DNA of 63,894 bases, counting the filler, from Octopus bimaculoides (Eukaryota): the NCBI RefSeq assembly GCF_001194135.2. It is 5 parts of 5 records of this genome, joined end to end, with 100 filler letters (N's around TTAATTAATTAA, not from the genome) between each part and the next. Parts side by side here need not be neighbours in the genome. Positions count along the whole stretch, not along the records: positions 16,621 to 30,747 come from NC_068995.1; 4 more parts are not named here. One strand, 5' to 3'. The notes beneath the pieces were generated by a model. The model saw nothing but the letters and a program-made list of their open reading frames with translations, was not told the DNA's origin and did no database searches. Both the position numbers and the translations under genes were made by a program. Below are positions 13,776 to 29,854 of the stretch, in pieces. The number at the start of each line of letters is the position of its first letter. Positions within the stretch are counted from its first letter, which is position 1.

Positions 13776-13807
<32 letters not shown>

Positions 13808-14539
13808 CACTGATGGAAAGACGGTGGGATAGGAATAGCTTGTGCCAAATTAGGTAACCATCATCATCATCACCATCATCACCACCACCACCACCACCAT
13901 CACCTCTGCTATCATCGCCATGGTCACCACTCTACCAAGTGCATCATCATTGCTAGCACCACCAACAACCACCACTACAACTACCACCGTCGCCGCTATC
14001 ATCATCATCAACCACCACTATCACCACTGCTACTGCTACTGCCACCACCACAACCACAACTACCATTCTCATCACCATAGGTACCACCACCATCACCCCC
14101 ACTACCACCACCACCACTACAATGACCACCACAATCGCCGCCATCACCACCACATCCCGCTACCATCACCACCACCACAATCACTCACCACTGCGACCAT
14201 CACCACCAACACCAACACCATCACTGCCCCCACCATGGTAGATGGGTTGTACAGGGTAGATAGACAGGCAGGTAAGTATTCTGGGTGACTCTTGTCCTAA
14301 ACTGGGTTACAATCCACCACGCCCACCACCACCACTATACTAGGGTAGAGAGTACAGTAAAGGGTGGATAGGGGCTAAGCTGGGTGGATCTGCCAGTGAG
14401 GGAAACTAATAAAAACGCCTCCATGTGCTTGTATGCCCAGCTAGAAATAGCAGCCAAATCTCCCTCAAATCACACAGACCCATCATAAATATGGTGGGCG
14501 AGGACGGCAGGGTGGGTATAGCGGTACAGGGTATAATGT

Positions 14540-17210: not shown

Positions 17211-17692
17211 TGTACATTACAATATATTTTTTTACAATAATTTTTCCGGTGCATCGAGTTCCTAACCAGAACCGTTAAGAATCTCAGCTTTCACCAACAA
17301 ATGTATTAATTATATTGCTTATATAAATTGTATCTATAACTATGCAGTTATTTATTTTTATGTATAGAGAGTGAAAACAACTCACGCGTCAGCCATTATA
17401 AGCGTGTGATTTATTTTTCCCACGCGTATTAATACAGACACGCATGTAAAATAACAAACACCTTCGTGAAAATTATGTATGTATATAAATATGAGTGCAC
17501 TTACATACATACATACATACATACATATGTGTGTGTATGTGTGTGTGTACAGACAGATTGAGTGAGAGAGAGAAATTTATAGATGCAAATACACACGTAT
17601 ATACATATAAAAATGTAAGCATTTGTGCCTCTCTTTACATAACTACATACATGCATATATGTATACAGAGAGAGTGACAAAGAGGCATCTAG

Positions 17693-18458: not shown

Positions 18459-19166
18459 GCATATCCATGCACGCATACATATGTATATACAAAAATATTT
18501 TTCATGTGTGTGTACGTATATGTTTGCATGCTATCATGTCTGTATGCTTTTCGGATGTATATCCGAATCTATGTGTTTGTATGCATGTGGATGTGTATGT
18601 GTGTATACTACAAAAATCGGTCAAATCTATTATCTTACTTTATATTCATTTAACGTTGATATCTTATCAGAAGTTATCAAAACTGTATCAAAAATGTTTG
18701 TATCCATTCTGCCATACATACATATACTCACATGACTAAGTGTTCTAAAATATCTTCGATGTTCGTTGCCCGCCTTTGGCAATCTTATATAAATACAGCA
18801 AGCCCTTATCTTAGACATCGCGCCAGGCTAAACTTATTTTCAACATTTTTATCGTTTAATCGTGAATATTTAAGGAACTACATACGCACACCACGCGCTC
18901 ATCCATATTCATATACATAAGTACACATACGTGAATATATGTGTGTGTTTGTGTGTGAGTGGTGGTGCGTGTGTGCATAGATATGTGTGTATATATACAT
19001 ATATGCATGTATGTATGTAGGTGTGTATGAATGTATGTACTGTACCCACATACACATATGTAGATATCGAAAATAATAATGAAAACAAATCGACAAAAGT
19101 CAATAGGACGTATACAGTGCATATGTATTACGTTGACGCTCGATTGAAGATGGGAAAAAGGGTGGG

Positions 19167-19279: not shown

Positions 19280-20069
19280 CATATATACACGTATGTATAT
19301 GTATGTATATGTATACGTATGCGTATTTGTGATTGCATAGATAGATAGATAGAGAGAGAGAGAGAGAGGGAGAGAAAGAGAGGGAGAGAGAGGGAGAGAG
19401 AGAGGGAGAGAGAGAGAGAGGGAGAGAGATGCCCAAGTGTATGTATGTATATAAGATACACACACTCAGGTACATTCAATGCCATGCATGCAAAGCTGAC
19501 AAGGAAGTAACTCCAAGTGCGATCTAAAATAATGTCTACAAGAAAACGACAGGCGCCATGGAGAGCGTTGTGCTTGAATTTCCTGATGCGAAAGCAAATG
19601 ATGGTACGGNNNNNNNNNNNNNNNNNNNNNNNNNNNNNNNNNNNNNNNNNNNNNNNNNNNNNNNNNNNNNNNNNNNNNNNNNNNNNNNNNNNNNNNNNNN
19701 NNNNNNNNNNNNNNNNNNNNNNNNNNNNNNNNNNNNNNNNNNNNNNNNNNNNNNNNNNNNNNNNNNNNNNNNNNNNNNNNNNNNNNNNNNNGAGAGAGAG
19801 AGGGGGAGGATGTTGGAGTTAAAATTTCTATTTCTAGATATGTTATCTAGGGCTGTTTGCCAAGAACGTAACAACTTTTTAGAACCGAACACGCGCCAAT
19901 ACATACACAGAGATTACAATATATATACATATATAACTATGTGTGTGTATGTGTGTATCTGTGCATATATGTGCTTTTGTGTGTCTGTATATAATTACGT
20001 ACGAATATCTACACCAATATTTTATGTAAAAAAATATGTGCTTATTAGTGTAATATATACGTATACAAC

Positions 20070-20316: not shown

Positions 20317-20392
<76 letters not shown>

Positions 20393-21126
20393 NNNNNNNN
20401 NNNNNNNNNNNNNNNNNNNNNNNNNNNNNNNNNNNNNNNNNNNNNNNNNNNNNNNNNNNNNNNNNNNNNNNNNNNNNNNNNNNNNNNNNNNNNNNNNNNN
20501 NNNNNNNNNNNNNNNNNNNNNNNNNNNNNNNNNNNNNNNNNNNNNNNNNNNNNNNNNNNNNNNNNNNNNNNNNNNNNNNNNNNNNNNNNNNNNNNNNNNN
20601 NNNNNNNNNNNNNNNNNNNNNNNNNNNNNNNNNNNNNNNNNNNNNNNNNNNNNNNNNNNNNNNNNNNNNNNNNNNNNNNNNNNNNNNNNNNNNNNNNNNN
20701 NNNNNNNNNNNNNNNNNNNNNNNNNNNNNNNNNNNNNNNNNNNNNNNNNNNNNNNNNNNNNNNNNNNNNNNNNNNNNNNNNNNNNNNNNNNNNNNNNNNN
20801 NNNNNNNNNNNNNNNNNNNNNNNNNNNNNNNNNNNNNNNNNNNNNNNNNNNNNNNNNNNNNNNNNNNNNNNNNNNNNNNNNNNNNNNNNNNNNNNNNNNN
20901 NNNNNNNNNNNNNNNNNNNNNNNNNNNNNNNNNNNNNNNNNNNNNNNNNNNNNNNNNNNNNNNNNNNNNNNNNNNNNNNNNNNNNNNNNNNNNNNNNNNN
21001 NNNNNNNNNNNNNNNNNNNNNNNNNNNNNNNNNNNNNNNNNNNNNNNNNNNNNNNNNNNNNNNNNNNNNNNNNNNNNNNNNNNNNNNNNNNNNNNNNNNN
21101 NNNNNNNNNNNNNNNNNNNNNNNNNN

Positions 21127-21184
<58 letters not shown>

Positions 21185-21213
21185 ACATACATATATACGT
21201 ACATACATAAGCA

Positions 21214-21678
21214 TACTTGTGGAATGCACCAGTGAAGACTTCAATAAAATGTAAGCACAACAGATCTGATATAAAGGCTTGGAATAGAGAAGAGAAACTG
21301 TGCACATTGGTAGAATTTAGTTGCCCAGCGGATGTTAACATAAAGCTGAAGATCAGTGAAAAAAAGAACACTCATGCTGAAATATTGAGAAATCTGCAGT
21401 TACTTTATCCAGATTACAAGTTCAGGTTTATACCTGTAATTATTGGGGACCTGGCATATGTAACACACTGCCTAAATACCAATCTTGAGAAATTAGGCGT
21501 CTTAAAATCCAGAAAGGAGAAAGCTAATTCGAAGACTACAGATCCAATCCATTAAAGGAACTGTGGAAATCTGTAAAACTTTCCAGAAGTTAATCATTTA
21601 AATATCTATGAGCATGTCTAGACATGTAGCTATATAACTATATGCATGGGAATACATACATAAAACATACAAATCTGC
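21214..21678 (+). mobile_element. RLE-type non-LTR retrotransposon 3' end, copy 1
   Basis: WNAPVKTSIKCKHNRSDIKAWNREEKLCTLVEFSCPAD...FIPVIIG; (acat)-like repeats on both sides. Confidence 0.8.
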
Positions 21679-21754
21679 ACATACATACATACATACATAC
21701 ATACATACATACATACATACATACATACGTACATACATACATACATACATACAT

Positions 21755-22225
21755 CAAAACTTCTATCAAATGTAAAAATAACAGGCCGGATATTGTTGTT
21801 TGGGACAGAGGGACAAAGGTATGTACCATCATAGAGGTCAGCTGCCCTGCAGATATAAATATCTCTTTGAAAATCAATCAAAGGAAAATATATCTATGAA
21901 CAACTGCTTCGAAACCTCGAGCTTCTATATCCAGACTATGAATTCATATTCATATCAATAATAATTGGAGCACTAGGCTTTGTTAGTAAATGCTTAAAGG
22001 ATAATCTGGATAAACTGGGATTTTCAGAAAGAGAAACCGACCGGCTAATTCGTATATTACAAATACAATCTATGAGTGGAACAGTAAAAATATGCAAGAC
22101 TTTTCTCAAGTTCCAAATGTGAATTTGTCTGTATTAAGTACATCCCAAAGATGGAGCCTTGTATCTCTGTAGGAAACTGGCTCCCTCCTCAAGGGAAGAT
22201 TTATCCCAATTAAAAATAGAAGAGA
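21755..22225 (+). mobile_element. RLE-type non-LTR retrotransposon 3' end, copy 2
   Basis: KTSIKCKNNRPDIVVWDRGTKVCTIIEVSCPAD, frameshift, ...IIIGALGFV...LQIQSMSGTVKICKTFLKFQM*; between two (ACAT)n tracts. Confidence 0.85.
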
Positions 22226-22300
22226 CACATACATACATACATACATACATACATACATACATACATACATACATACATACATACATGGATGCATACATAC

Positions 22301-22676
22301 AGCAGATGTGCATATCTCTTTGATTTTCAAAGAGAAAGAAGATAACTATGGACAACTGCTGTGAAACCTCCAGCTTCTGTATATTTGCATTTCTTCAAAT
22401 AATAATTGAAACACTTGTTTTCGTATATAAATGTCTAACTGTCAATCTGAAAGAGCTTAAATTTTCAGAAAAAGAAATCAACCAACTGACTCACACGTTA
22501 CAAATGCAATCTGTAAGTGGAACAATAAATCTATGCAAGACTTCTCTCGGGCTTAAAATGTGACATTGTTTTCGTTATCTTCATTCCAGTGATGGAGATT
22601 TGTATCTTTGTTGGAAACTAGCACTTTCTTCAAAGGAAGAATTTAAATGGTAAGAAAATAAAAGAATAGAAAAGAA
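22301..22676 (+). mobile_element. RLE-type non-LTR retrotransposon 3' end, copy 3 (most decayed)
   Basis: ADVHISL...YGQLL*NLQLLY...LQMQSVSGTINLCKTSLGLKM*; 3' UTR alignable with copy 2; ends in acatacatac. Confidence 0.8.
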
Positions 22677-23313
22677 ACATACATACGTGCACAGATGTGA
22701 GTGTTTGTTAGAAAGTATGTGTTTATCGATGAAAGTGCATATAACTACAATTCTTGTGTAATTTTGGTTTGTGTTTCTTTCCTATATGTCAAAGAGGACA
22801 TAAGAAATCAATGAATAAAGATACTTAAAATATATATTGCATAGTTTCTACAATATATAAATCATGTAGATAAACAGCCTTTGGTTGTAGGCAGGAAATG
22901 GAACTCTCTATGTGTTAAAACAACTTTAATGAACAACAGCTGCTGGCTTCATTCTTACAAAGCAAAATCTCTCCATTTTGAAAAGAACGTGTACATTGAA
23001 AAACGTCTTGACTGATAAAAAAAAAAAATACGATGTTACAAACATGTTCATATGGTGCTCCTGTAAAGCCGCTTTCCAGAAGATTGAAATCAGTAAATGA
23101 ACAAAAGATTGAAATAATAATGTTATTATCTTGGGAATAATTTTTATACAAAATACTGTATGCACGGAAAGTCATTGGAAGATGTTGTTGCTTTCTATTA
23201 AGGCTATGCTGCGCTGATGAGATTTATATGGCCGGAATGTGTACAGTGTAGTCTTTGGACTTAACAAAATCAGACCCTTTCTACATTACGTATTTTCATT
23301 TAATTTTTGTTCG

Positions 23314-26300: not shown

Positions 26301-27221
26301 TATACTCGCTCGTGTAATTGTTTCATTTCATATTTGGCATTCCACTCATGACGGTTTTATTGACCTTTAAGTCATATTCCTATTGATTTTGCTATCGATA
26401 TTGAGAATTCGTATTATCATTATTGCTTTTATTCGCATTAATAATAAAGATTTTAAAAAAAAAAAACATAGGCGTAGGCGAATATCTGGTGTTGGGTGTG
26501 TGGCGATGTTGGGGGTTTTGGGGAAAGGTGAAATCAATTGAATCTGTATCGATTATTGATAGTGACTTCGTTTATCGACCCCGGAAGGATAAACGAGTGA
26601 GTTGATATCAGAGAAATTTAAAATCAGAATGCTAAAAGGATGGAACAAAATGCCGCAAAGCATTTTTCGTATTTAGTTGTGATCTTAATGCTCGACAGTC
26701 TACCGNNNNNNNNNNNNNNNNNNNNNNNNNNNNNNNNNNNNNNNNNNNNNNNNNNNNNNNNNNNNNNNNNNNNNNNNNNNNNNNNNNNNNNNNNNNNNNN
26801 NNNNNNNNNNNNNNNNNNNNNNNNNNNNNNNNNNNNNNNNNNNNNNNNNNNNNNNNNNNNNNNNNNNNNNNNNNNNNNNNNNNNNNNNNNNNNNNNNNNN
26901 NNNNNNNNNNNNNNNNNNNNNNNNNNNNNNNNNNNNNNNNNNNNNNNNNNNNNNNNNNNNNNNNNNNNNNNNNNGAGGAGGAGGAGGAGGAGTGTAATAA
27001 TAATCCTTTCTGTTGTTAAAGGCACAAGGCCGGAAATTTTTGGGAAGCGGGTATTTCGATTGCATCAACCCCAGTGTTCAACTGATCAATATTTAATAGA
27101 CTCCCAAAAGATAGAAATACAAAGTCGACCTCGGCGGAATTTGAACTCAGAGCGTAGCAACAGACAAAATATTGCTAAGCATTTCGCCCGGCGTGCTAAC
27201 GATTCTGACAGCTCACAACCC

Positions 27222-28462: not shown

Positions 28463-29854
28463 AGCACAAAATTATATAAACATGCATACATAAATATGCA
28501 TGCATATTTACGCGCGCACGTCTGTGTGTGGGGATGATGTGTGTATGTGTGTGTGCTTTGGTTGTTATGAAATTTTACAAATAGTATACCACTCAATCTG
28601 ATAAGATTTTAAAGATATTATTGGAATGAAAACCACATTCAAACGCTTACTGAATCGAACGCAGTTTCTAAACCTTATTGTCTTTACAGCGAAATAAGTT
28701 AATATTTCGGCCAGGTAACTCTGGGTAATTTCACAAGGGTTTTTGAGATTTGTATATCATTGTAATTATATATGCTCACACATACACACACACGCGCACA
28801 CACACACATACACACACATATGTCTAAGTGTGCTTGTGTGTGCGCGTGTCTATGTGCCTGTGTGTGTGTGTGACCTGGGGATAGACAGCATGCGTAACAC
28901 CAAGCAGCCTCTATTGCGGTGGCTGATTTGTTGGAAAGAGTAGCTAAATTGCCTGGAACCAAATCGTACAATTTTTACAATCGAGCGACATATTGGTTCC
29001 AGATACATTATGAGATAGCCACGGTTGGAACGATTGTTACCATAGTTCTCTCCGATCAAAGCTGAAATAGAGTTAAAGAACGTCGAGTATAATAACGAAG
29101 ACAAAAGCGACAACAACCACAAGAACAACAACAACGACGACTATAACAATACGGCTTCAGTACAATGTAATTGAATATTAATACTAATTAATCTGATGAC
29201 AGAATACACAGGAACCGGGAAATTAGTTAATTACAAGGATTGTTTAGAAATAATTAAGCATTGTTATTAAACATGAAGGCTGTCATTGCAGCTATTGTGG
29301 CTTTCATCTATCAGCTAACAACTGCTTGAAGTAGGAAGTTATTAGAACCACGCACAGCTGTACTCCACCTCGCGCTGTACTACGGAGTATTGTTTTACAC
29401 GTATATAGAATTATATTGTTATATACGACATGTGGCGTATCACATCATTGCACTAGATTGGTTTCAAATTTTGGCATAAGCCCAGTAAGTTCGAGAGAGA
29501 AGGGGGCTAAGTCGATTACATCAATCCCAGTGCTCAACTGGTACTTATTTTATCGATCCGACAGGGATGAAAGGCAAAGTCGACTTCGGCAGAATTTGAA
29601 CTCAGAACATGAAGACAGGCGAAATACTGCTAAGCATTTCGCCCGGCGTGCTAACGTTTCTACAAGCACACTGCCTTAGTGGATCCCTGAGAGGAACAAA
29701 AGTTGAAAATAAACAGCTTTTATCCAACACCTGGCTACTTTCTCTCTCTCTCTCTCTCTCAGTTTGAATCAATGGATTTAGTTGAATCAGTACACCATAA
29801 GACAGAACGCTTTGTGGTATTTAACTTCATCTCTTCACGTTCTGATGAAAATGC

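What the first reader, a model, noticed from the sequence alone, without database searches (positions are those of the whole stretch)
21181..22690. Three tandem RLE retrotransposon ends each embedded in (ACAT)n: candidate tetranucleotide-microsatellite-targeting LINE lineage
Seen: three same-orientation fragments of one protein family (HNRPD-type restriction-like endonuclease end) are each truncated at a different 5' point. They are highly diverged, copy 1 has a different 3' UTR from copies 2 and 3, and every junction is (ACAT)n. Established: RLE-bearing R4/Dong elements can be specific for simple repeats (Dong: TAA). Inference: independent insertions of at least two subfamilies into one (ACAT)n tract, i.e. 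sequence-specific targeting of a tetranucleotide repeat. I do not recognise a described family with this target.
Basis: partly seen in the sequence, partly recalled or inferred. Interest (0 to 1): 0.75.

Follow-up and report, generated by a model that had tools for sequence, protein, structure and literature searches.

The report
Decayed Dong-like LINE ends, ACAT tails
Three broken tail-ends of one jumping-gene family sit head to tail, each ending in its own ACAT repeat, showing a known habit of such elements (landing in repeats like their own tail) with a less familiar four-letter repeat.

Summary
The three fragments are real. They are same-strand, 5'-truncated, decayed 3' ends of one non-LTR retrotransposon family (copy 1 ~21184-21651, copy 2 21755-22226, copy 3 22302-22676). 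Intact relatives encode one ~1150-aa protein with no APE domain. It has a Myb/SANT-like N-terminus, a reverse transcriptase, a CCHC knuckle and a C-terminal endonuclease that folds like the R2 restriction-like endonuclease. This matches the published description of R4/Dong elements. (ACAT)n is the family's own 3' tail: it follows all three copies and three relatives elsewhere (L008, L021, L022). Sister families end in (ACTT)n, (ACTG)n or (ACAG)n. "Every junction is ACAT" is overstated. Copy 1's left flank is (AG)27, its 25-nt ACAT-like stretch aligns with element coding sequence, and the rightmost tail has only about 4 units before unique DNA. Targeting of the tail repeat is nevertheless supported. 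A second copy of the copy-2 family has ACAT on both sides. Sister families show the same arrays and full-length copies embedded in stand-alone tracts of their tail repeat. One ACAT-tailed relative has a unique 5' flank. Verdict: a new member of the known microsatellite-homing RLE LINEs. Clade placement by RT phylogeny was not possible.

The parts
21127..21181 (.). (AG)27 microsatellite, the true left flank of the array; an assembly gap (N 20393-21126) lies directly upstream
21184..21601 (+). Copy 1 coding remnant: C-terminal RLE domain (HNRSD...EFSCPAD...K). One frameshift near 21500; the homologous frame stops at 21599-21601. The first 25 nt (ACAT-like) align with internal coding sequence of relatives
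21602..21651 (+). Copy 1 short 3' UTR, unrelated to the UTR of copies 2 and 3
21652..21754 (+). (ACAT)~25 tract: 3' tail of copy 1 and 5' junction of copy 2 (degenerate up to ~21678, then near perfect)
21755..22122 (+). Copy 2 coding remnant (KTSIKCKNNRPDIVVWD...EVSCPADINISLK...). Frameshift near 21885; stop at 22120-22122. 82% nt identity to L001 and 81% to L022
22123..22226 (+). Copy 2 3' UTR, shared with copy 3 and in part with L022
22227..22301 (+). (ACAT)~19 tract: tail of copy 2 and 5' junction of copy 3 (interrupted by ggatg at 22287-22291)
22302..22563 (+). Copy 3 coding remnant, starting inside the SCPAD motif (gcagatgtg). It has stops and an 11-nt deletion; stop at 22561-22563
22564..22676 (+). 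Copy 3 3' UTR (72% identical to copy 2 across coding remnant plus UTR)
22677..22692 (+). Short degenerate tail of copy 3 (acatacatacgtgcac), followed by unique DNA. The 8-nt cagatgtg at 22692-22699 repeats 22303-22310
   Evidence: direct reading

Best explanation
Window 21184-22692 is a decayed head-to-tail array of three 5'-truncated 3' ends of an R2-superfamily, most likely R4/Dong-like, non-LTR retrotransposon. Intact relatives encode a single ~1150-aa protein made of a Myb/SANT-like N-terminus, a reverse transcriptase, a CCHC knuckle and a C-terminal PD-(D/E)xK restriction-like endonuclease. The RNA of this family ends in (ACAU)n, so each DNA copy carries an (ACAT)n 3' tail. New copies are made by target-primed reverse transcription and usually stop short of the 5' end. 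They land preferentially in existing tracts of the same repeat, here the tails of older copies. This places them in the same orientation and builds the array. The likely order is copy 1, then copy 2, then copy 3. Shown: the homology, the endonuclease fold, that ACAT is the family's tail, that the copies come from at least two subfamilies, and that relatives repeatedly lie in tracts of their own tail repeat. Inferred: the order of insertion, and the means of repeat recognition. Recognition could come from pairing of the RNA tail with the nicked repeat strand, from the Myb-like DNA-binding region or endonuclease, or from both.
For: Three homologous fragments and their boundaries. Domain order of full-length relatives (no APE; RVT_1; zf-RVT; C-terminal domain). 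Best solved relatives by sequence are R2 proteins (E 5e-24). The AlphaFold model of the C-terminal domain (pLDDT 80.7) matches the R2Tg, R2Pm and R2Bm endonuclease regions (TM 0.65-0.70, E 6.5e-7). Invariant D, E and K of the PD...E...K motif. ACAT is the tail: all three window copies, L008 (CATA)59, L021 and L022. Sister families end in (ACTT)n (L002, L004, L005, L011, L012), (ACTG)n (L017) or ACAT-then-(ACAG)n (L007). Homing: L022, the same family as copy 2 (81% nt), begins element sequence at nt 23, directly after (ACAT)5.5, and ends in (CATA)n. L011 is full length with (CTTA)n on both sides. L012, L004 and L017 have 5' tracts of the tail-type repeat not preceded by any 3' UTR of the family. 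L005 is a three-copy array like the window's. Not a simple local duplication: 5' truncation points differ, and the copies are not each other's closest relatives. The N-terminal W..E..DL..CY...GY..RM...W.E.HPE...LRDQ motif without zinc fingers matches the published R4/Dong description (PMC7998251). Dong-R4 is abundant in cephalopods (PMC8967140, PMC13282606), and the window copies cluster with an Argonauta hians protein.
Against: The array's outer flanks are (AG)27 and unique DNA, so nothing shows a tract that predates the elements. L008 has an ACAT tail but a unique 5' flank. L002 copy A has a (CTTA)n tail but lies behind (ACAT)n(ATAG)n, which are other repeats. Other ACAT-type tracts in the same piece are unoccupied. 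Copies 2 and 3 (77% to each other, 82% and 78% to L001) could still derive from one local duplication. The assembly around the microsatellites could not be checked with reads. Clade placement rests on domain layout and literature, not on an RT tree. The sample of relatives is about 12 loci from several unidentified organisms, not a census of this genome.
Confidence: 0.6

Rival explanations
1. One insertion event with template jumping. The reverse transcriptase, primed once at the right-hand target, copied part of one RNA and then jumped onto the (ACAU)n tail of a second and a third RNA. This would make a three-copy array with no target preference. (ACAT)n would then be a tail only.
For: The outer flanks of the array are not ACAT: (AG)27 on the left, and unique DNA after a 4-unit tail on the right. 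L008 has a unique 5' flank. End-to-end template jumping is established for the R2 reverse transcriptase (my own knowledge; no paper was read on this).
Against: Full-length or solitary relatives lie behind stand-alone tracts of their tail repeat, with no upstream copy (L012, L004, L017). Jumping cannot explain that. Jumps are expected at RNA 5' ends, yet the three copies begin at three internal points. Copy 1 looks older than copies 2 and 3 (75% to its nearest relative against 78-82%), although those relatives come from other genomes.
Confidence: 0.15
2. Local tandem duplication. Copies 2 and 3 arose from one insertion by unequal exchange between ACAT tracts, and copy 3 later lost its first ~95 nt. 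Only copy 1 and one ancestor of copies 2 and 3 would then be true insertions.
For: Copies 2 and 3 share the 3' UTR and are 72-77% identical. Their mutual distance (0.23) is smaller than the sum of their distances to L001 (0.18 + 0.22).
Against: Their 5' ends differ. L001 and L022 come from other samples, so a shared same-genome source lineage explains the distances equally well. L022 shows that this family inserts next to ACAT independently. Copy 1 belongs to another subfamily with another UTR, so at least two independent insertions remain.
Confidence: 0.12
3. Strict protein-directed site specificity of the R2 or Waldo kind. Under this reading a genomic (ACAT)n microsatellite existed first, and all three elements were aimed at it by sequence-specific cleavage.
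For: Two of three window 5' junctions, and L022, lie in ACAT. Sister families are embedded in stand-alone tracts. A conserved N-terminal Myb-like region could read DNA.
Against: No ACAT lies outside the array. L008 and L002 copy A lie at non-cognate sites. Flanking repeats are sometimes a neighbouring motif rather than the tail motif: (ACTC)n against (ACTG)n in L017, and (CCTT)n next to (ACTT)n in L012. That fits loose pairing better than strict recognition.
Confidence: 0.15
4. Assembly artefact: separate copies from different loci were joined through their shared ACAT tracts.
For: The piece is full of gaps that abut microsatellites (N runs at 19610, 20393 and 26706). The tracts are 75-103 nt, close to short-read length.
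Against: Equivalent arrays occur in other assemblies whose contig names suggest long reads (L005, L012-L016). Even if the copies were mis-joined, each would still have ACAT at both ends, which would strengthen the targeting reading rather than weaken it.
Confidence: 0.07

Closest known systems
Dong / R4 clade (RLE-bearing non-LTR retrotransposons; RepeatMasker class LINE/Dong-R4)
   Same: A single ORF with RT, a CCHC knuckle and a C-terminal restriction-like endonuclease. There is no APE domain and no N-terminal zinc fingers, but there is a Myb/SANT-like N-terminal motif. The 3' tail is a simple repeat identical to the preferred target. Copies are 5'-truncated and lie in one orientation inside the repeat. 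The class is abundant in molluscs and cephalopods (PMC7998251, PMC3812793, PMC8967140, PMC13282606).
   Different: The published Dong target and tail is the trinucleotide (TAA)n in insects, molluscs and cnidarians. Here the repeats are tetranucleotides: ACAT in the window, and ACTT, ACTG or ACAG in sister families. Membership by RT phylogeny was not tested.
Waldo (R1 clade)
   Same: Published target is the (ACAY)n microsatellite, the same repeat class as here (PMC3812793).
   Different: Waldo is an APE-type element. Full-length relatives of the window family have no Exo_endo_phos domain and carry an R2-type endonuclease. Any resemblance is convergent choice of target, not relatedness.
Togen (NeSL-related, (TG)n) and microsatellite-specific HERO families
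   Same: RLE-bearing LINEs reported as specific for microsatellites (PMC4640811).
   Different: Their repeats differ. NeSL-type elements have N-terminal zinc fingers (my own knowledge), and none are seen here. The relationship could not be tested without reference sequences.
R2 (28S rDNA-specific)
   Same: Closest solved structures. RT similarity is E 5e-24 and the endonuclease fold matches at TM 0.65-0.70. The insertion mechanism is target-primed reverse transcription.
   Different: R2 inserts at one 28S rDNA site and has N-terminal zinc finger(s) plus Myb. This family has no zinc finger, ends in a microsatellite tail, and lies in microsatellites.

Membership tests
R2-superfamily (RLE-bearing) non-LTR retrotransposon | Reverse transcriptase in the same ORF, upstream of the endonuclease | tested here: met
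   RVT_1 is present in full-length relatives. The best PDB sequence matches are R2 proteins. The window copies themselves are truncated downstream of the RT.
R2-superfamily (RLE-bearing) non-LTR retrotransposon | C-terminal CCHC knuckle followed by a PD-(D/E)xK restriction-like endonuclease | tested here: met
   CCHC is found by regex and by zf-RVT. D, E and K are invariant. The model's top fold matches are the R2Tg, R2Pm and R2Bm endonuclease regions. Pfam has no model for this domain and was silent.
R2-superfamily (RLE-bearing) non-LTR retrotransposon | No N-terminal APE (Exo_endo_phos) endonuclease | tested here: met
   None was found in 11 full-length proteins.
R4/Dong clade | RT groups with R4, Dong and Rex6 in a phylogeny that also includes R2, NeSL, HERO and CRE | not testable with these tools
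   No Repbase or Dfam reference sequences were available. Only R2 is in the PDB.
R4/Dong clade | N-terminal Myb/SANT-like domain without zinc fingers (PMC7998251) | tested here: inconclusive
   The conserved motif W..E..DL..CY...GY..RM...W.E.HPE...LRDQ...I is present in 7 of 10 full-length proteins, and there is no C2H2 pattern. Pfam finds nothing even at E 10.
R4/Dong clade | Insertion into rDNA or a microsatellite, in one orientation, with the 3' tail equal to the target repeat | tested here: met
   Window copies 2 and 3, L022, L011, L012, L004, L005 and L017. Exceptions are L008 and L002 copy A.
Dong proper | (TAA)n target and tail | tested here: not met
   Tails are (ACAT)n, (ACTT)n, (ACTG)n or (ACAG)n. 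No copy ends in (TAA)n.
Waldo (R1 clade, ACAY-specific) | APE-type endonuclease at the N-terminus | tested here: not met
   No Exo_endo_phos domain, and the endonuclease is C-terminal and R2-like.
R2 proper | Insertion at the 28S rDNA site; N-terminal C2H2 zinc finger(s) | tested here: not met
   Flanks are microsatellites or unique DNA. There is no C2H2 pattern.
HERO clade | RT groups with HERO references | not testable with these tools
   No reference sequences. The literature says some HERO families are microsatellite-specific (PMC4640811), so HERO is not excluded.

The most novel reading that the evidence does not exclude
The window samples a radiation of R4/Dong-like RLE LINEs, seen in a cephalopod and in several unidentified contigs of metagenome assemblies. 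In this reading each sublineage has moved to a different tetranucleotide microsatellite (ACAT, ACTT, ACTG, ACAG) that matches its own 3' tail. Target choice would then be set largely by pairing of the RNA tail with the target, so it could be reprogrammed by changing a 4-nt repeat. That would be a natural series for asking how RLE retrotransposons choose targets.
Probability: 0.35. Interest if true: 0.55.

Novelty: new member of a known kind. Interest (0 to 1): 0.33.

Why it matters
Microsatellite-homing RLE LINEs are a known class, including Dong (TAA)n, Togen (TG)n and some HERO families. These elements also seed and interrupt microsatellites. The modest new point is that a large, apparently Dong-like group uses tetranucleotide tails and targets that differ between sublineages (9477 representative proteins at E <= 0.001). 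The repeat-rich sequence of this window also contains many microsatellite tracts. If the tail sets the target, this group would be a simple natural system for studying how R2-type retrotransposons are aimed, a topical question for gene-insertion tools built on R2. The window's own copies are dead relics with no function.

Tried and rejected
Pfam on the three fragments gave no meaningful hit. There is no Pfam model of this endonuclease, so the domain was identified through full-length relatives and by fold search.

It was rerun with database proteins only.

The metagenome contig scan returned only 3 loci. The bacterial/archaeal genome and viral collections were not scanned, being irrelevant to a eukaryotic LINE.

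The key classification paper (PMC2829327) is not held. No paper reporting a tetranucleotide-specific Dong/R4 element was found, but Repbase Reports are not searchable here.

Pfam on the N-terminal 120 aa was silent.

Other ACAT-type tracts in the piece (17502, 17646, 18982 on the minus strand, 28476) were tested for adjacent element remnants, and none was found.

A quick neighbour-joining tree of the ~125-aa C-terminal domain groups the window copies with L001, L006, L007 and the Argonauta protein. It does not cleanly separate ACAT-tailed from ACTT-tailed elements and has no support values, so it was used only as a hint.

Segmental duplication of all three copies was rejected on subfamily distances and UTRs. 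It was kept as a minor rival for copies 2 and 3.

Full report
**What is there**

The piece is AT-rich, packed with microsatellites and broken by assembly gaps. Between 21184 and 22692 the + strand carries three fragments of one protein family.

- Copy 1 reads ...LWNAPVKTSIKCKHNRSDIKAWN..EFSCPADVNIKLK..., with a frameshift near 21500. In the homologous frame it stops at 21599-21601.
- Copy 2 reads KTSIKCKNNRPDIVVWD..EVSCPADINISLK..., with a frameshift near 21885 and a stop at 22120-22122.
- Copy 3 starts inside the SCPAD motif at 22302, has stops and an 11-nt deletion, and ends at 22561-22563.

tBLASTn with database relatives finds exactly these three places and nothing else in the piece. Nucleotide identity is 68% for copy 1/copy 2 and 77% for copy 2/copy 3. 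Copies 2 and 3 share a ~105-110-nt 3' UTR. Copy 1 has a different UTR of ~50 nt. (ACAT)n tracts of about 25 and 19 units follow copies 1 and 2. Copy 3 is followed only by acatacatacgtgcac and then unique DNA.

**Correction to the observation**

The left junction is not an ACAT tract. Copy 1 abuts (AG)27 (21127-21181), and an N gap lies just beyond. The 25-nt ACAT-like stretch 21185-21209 sits where the intact relative L001 encodes EYIHTHEHKEYWWN (gaatacatacatacacatgaacacaag...). It is in frame and at the same 14-codon distance from WWN. The E-Y/F-I ... EYWWN block is conserved across the family. It is therefore most simply element sequence. A microhomology-guided 5' junction cannot be excluded.

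**What the element is**

Searches found a very large family: 9477 representative proteins at E <= 0.001 and 1117 clusters at E <= 1e-10. One member is annotated from the cephalopod Argonauta hians.

Full-length members (1050-1190 aa) contain RVT_1 in the middle, a CCHC knuckle (zf-RVT) and the C-terminal domain present in the window. None has an APE domain. By sequence the closest solved proteins are R2 retrotransposon proteins (E 5e-24).

An AlphaFold model of the C-terminal domain (pLDDT 80.7) matches the endonuclease regions of R2Tg, R2Pm and R2Bm best (TM 0.65-0.70 over 163-176 columns, E down to 6.5e-7). The D of (R/K)PD, the E of E(V/F)SCP and a downstream K are invariant.

The N-terminus has no C2H2 zinc finger. 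It carries a conserved W..E..DL..CY...GY..RM...W.E.HPE...LRDQ...I block. [quoted passage not shown] Pfam does not score the block.

Cephalopod genomes are reported to be rich in LINE/Dong-R4, with 5 recently active families and 1129 insertions in Octopus vulgaris (PMC13282606; also PMC8967140). I could not build an RT tree with R4, Dong, HERO and NeSL references, so R4/Dong-like is an inference and HERO is not excluded.

**Is ACAT a tail or a target?**

It is certainly the tail.

- All three window copies end in it.
- So do L008, with a 530-nt UTR and then (CATA)59, L021 and L022.
- L007 ends in acatacat followed by (ACAG)n.
- Sister families end in (ACTT)n (L002, L004, L005, L011, L012) or (ACTT)2(ACTG)n (L017).

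ACAT also behaves as a preferred landing site.

- L022 belongs to the same family as copy 2 (81% nt identity, including the start of the UTR). Its element sequence begins at nt 23, directly after (ACAT)5.5, and it ends in (CATA)n.
- L011 is a full-length element with (CTTA)n at both ends.
- L012 is a full-length element behind (CCTT)n(ACTT)36, followed by a second, truncated copy.
- L004 is full length behind a short ACTT tract.
- L017 lies between (ACTG)n(ACTC)n and an (ACTT)2(ACTG)n tail.
- In L012, L004 and L017 the upstream tract is not preceded by any 3' UTR of the family. These are stand-alone microsatellites, not tails of older copies.
- L005 is a three-copy head-to-tail array just like the window's.

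There is evidence against strict specificity.

- L008 has a unique 5' flank.
- L002 copy A, with a (CTTA)n tail, lies behind (ACAT)n(ATAG)n.
- Window copy 1 lies behind (AG)n.
- Other ACAT tracts in the piece are empty.

**Most likely history**

Copy 1 inserted at or next to the (AG)n tract and brought its ACAT tail. Copy 2, from another subfamily, inserted into that tail. Its 5' end joins at the shared "cat". Copy 3 inserted at the distal end of copy 2's tail.

An 8-nt cagatgtg occurs both at the start of copy 3 (22303-22310, where it is also element sequence) and just after its tail (22692-22699). This may be junction microhomology or a target duplication. I leave it open.

The copies are not each other's nearest relatives. 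Copy 1 is closest to L006 and L007 (74-75%). Copy 2 is closest to L001 (82%). A three-fold segmental duplication is therefore excluded. A duplication that produced copies 2 and 3 remains a minor possibility.

A single event with template jumping would also give non-ACAT outer flanks. It does not explain relatives embedded in stand-alone tracts.

**Comparison with what is known**

Microsatellite-specific RLE LINEs are established: Dong (TAA)n, including a snail Dong; Togen (TG)n; and some HERO families (PMC3812793, PMC4640811, PMC7998251). (ACAY)n itself is the published target of Waldo, an APE-type R1-clade element (PMC3812793).

What may be new is a Dong-like group whose tails and targets are tetranucleotides that differ between sublineages. 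I found no paper describing this. Repbase and Dfam entries could not be consulted.

**Verdict**

- The finding is a new member of a known kind.
- The window copies are dead relics.
- Interest is moderate to low.

Noticed in passing
window 22303-22310 and 22692-22699: The 8-nt direct repeat cagatgtg brackets copy 3 plus its short tail. The upstream copy is also homologous to element-internal sequence (gcagatgtg in L001). It could be 5'-junction microhomology or a target-site duplication.
   Followed up: partly
window 19610-19791, 20393-21126, 26706-26974: All three assembly gaps in the piece abut or lie near microsatellites, for example (AT)n at 20372-20392 and (AG)27 at 21127-21181. Tract lengths and adjacency in this region may therefore be unreliable.
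   Followed up: no
L008 2998-3327 and 4136-5462: The 3' UTR of the ACAT-tailed relative holds 22 copies of a 15-nt tandem repeat (ATATTGTCTGGGTCT). About 400 nt beyond its tail the contig runs into (TTAGGG)n and a 144-nt satellite that contains TTAGGG, which suggests a subtelomeric setting.
   Followed up: no
L012 2466-2520, 6757-6790 and 7552-7580 (same in L013-L016): A 55-nt fragment of the CCHC/YYLP coding region lies between the (ACTT)36 tract and the 5' end of the full-length element. It breaks at tattacttac, an internal ACTT-like run. The same ~30-nt string aattattc[a/c]caagtttttgctgcagata follows two successive tails. This points to nested insertion into an older copy at an internal ACTT-like site, or to local duplication.
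   Followed up: partly
L003 7998-8060 and 11450-11500 (Argonauta hians contig): The same (CAT)n-CCATTTAACGTCCGCTTTCCA... sequence lies on both sides of the RLE LINE copy. It is probably another short repeat family (SINE-like), and it is unrelated to the tetranucleotide tails.
   Followed up: no
L017 7780-7880 and L002 7229-7332: About 100 nt (aatttcagttaatcagtgaa...tacttactgt.ggccagttt.agagatactagcttga) is shared between the 3' UTR of the L017 element and the stretch that follows the (CTTA)21 tail of L002 copy A. This suggests a further truncated 3' UTR fragment in the L002 array.
   Followed up: no
L017/L018/L019 8550-11349 (minus strand) and 13801-14531: An unrelated APE-type LINE (Exo_endo_phos plus RVT_1) lies next to the RLE copy in inverted duplicate.
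   Followed up: no
window 17502-17527, 18982-19044, 28476-28506: Further ACAT/TATG-type tracts in the piece have no recognisable element end beside them. ACAT tracts therefore also exist independently of this family, or have outlived their elements.
   Followed up: yes
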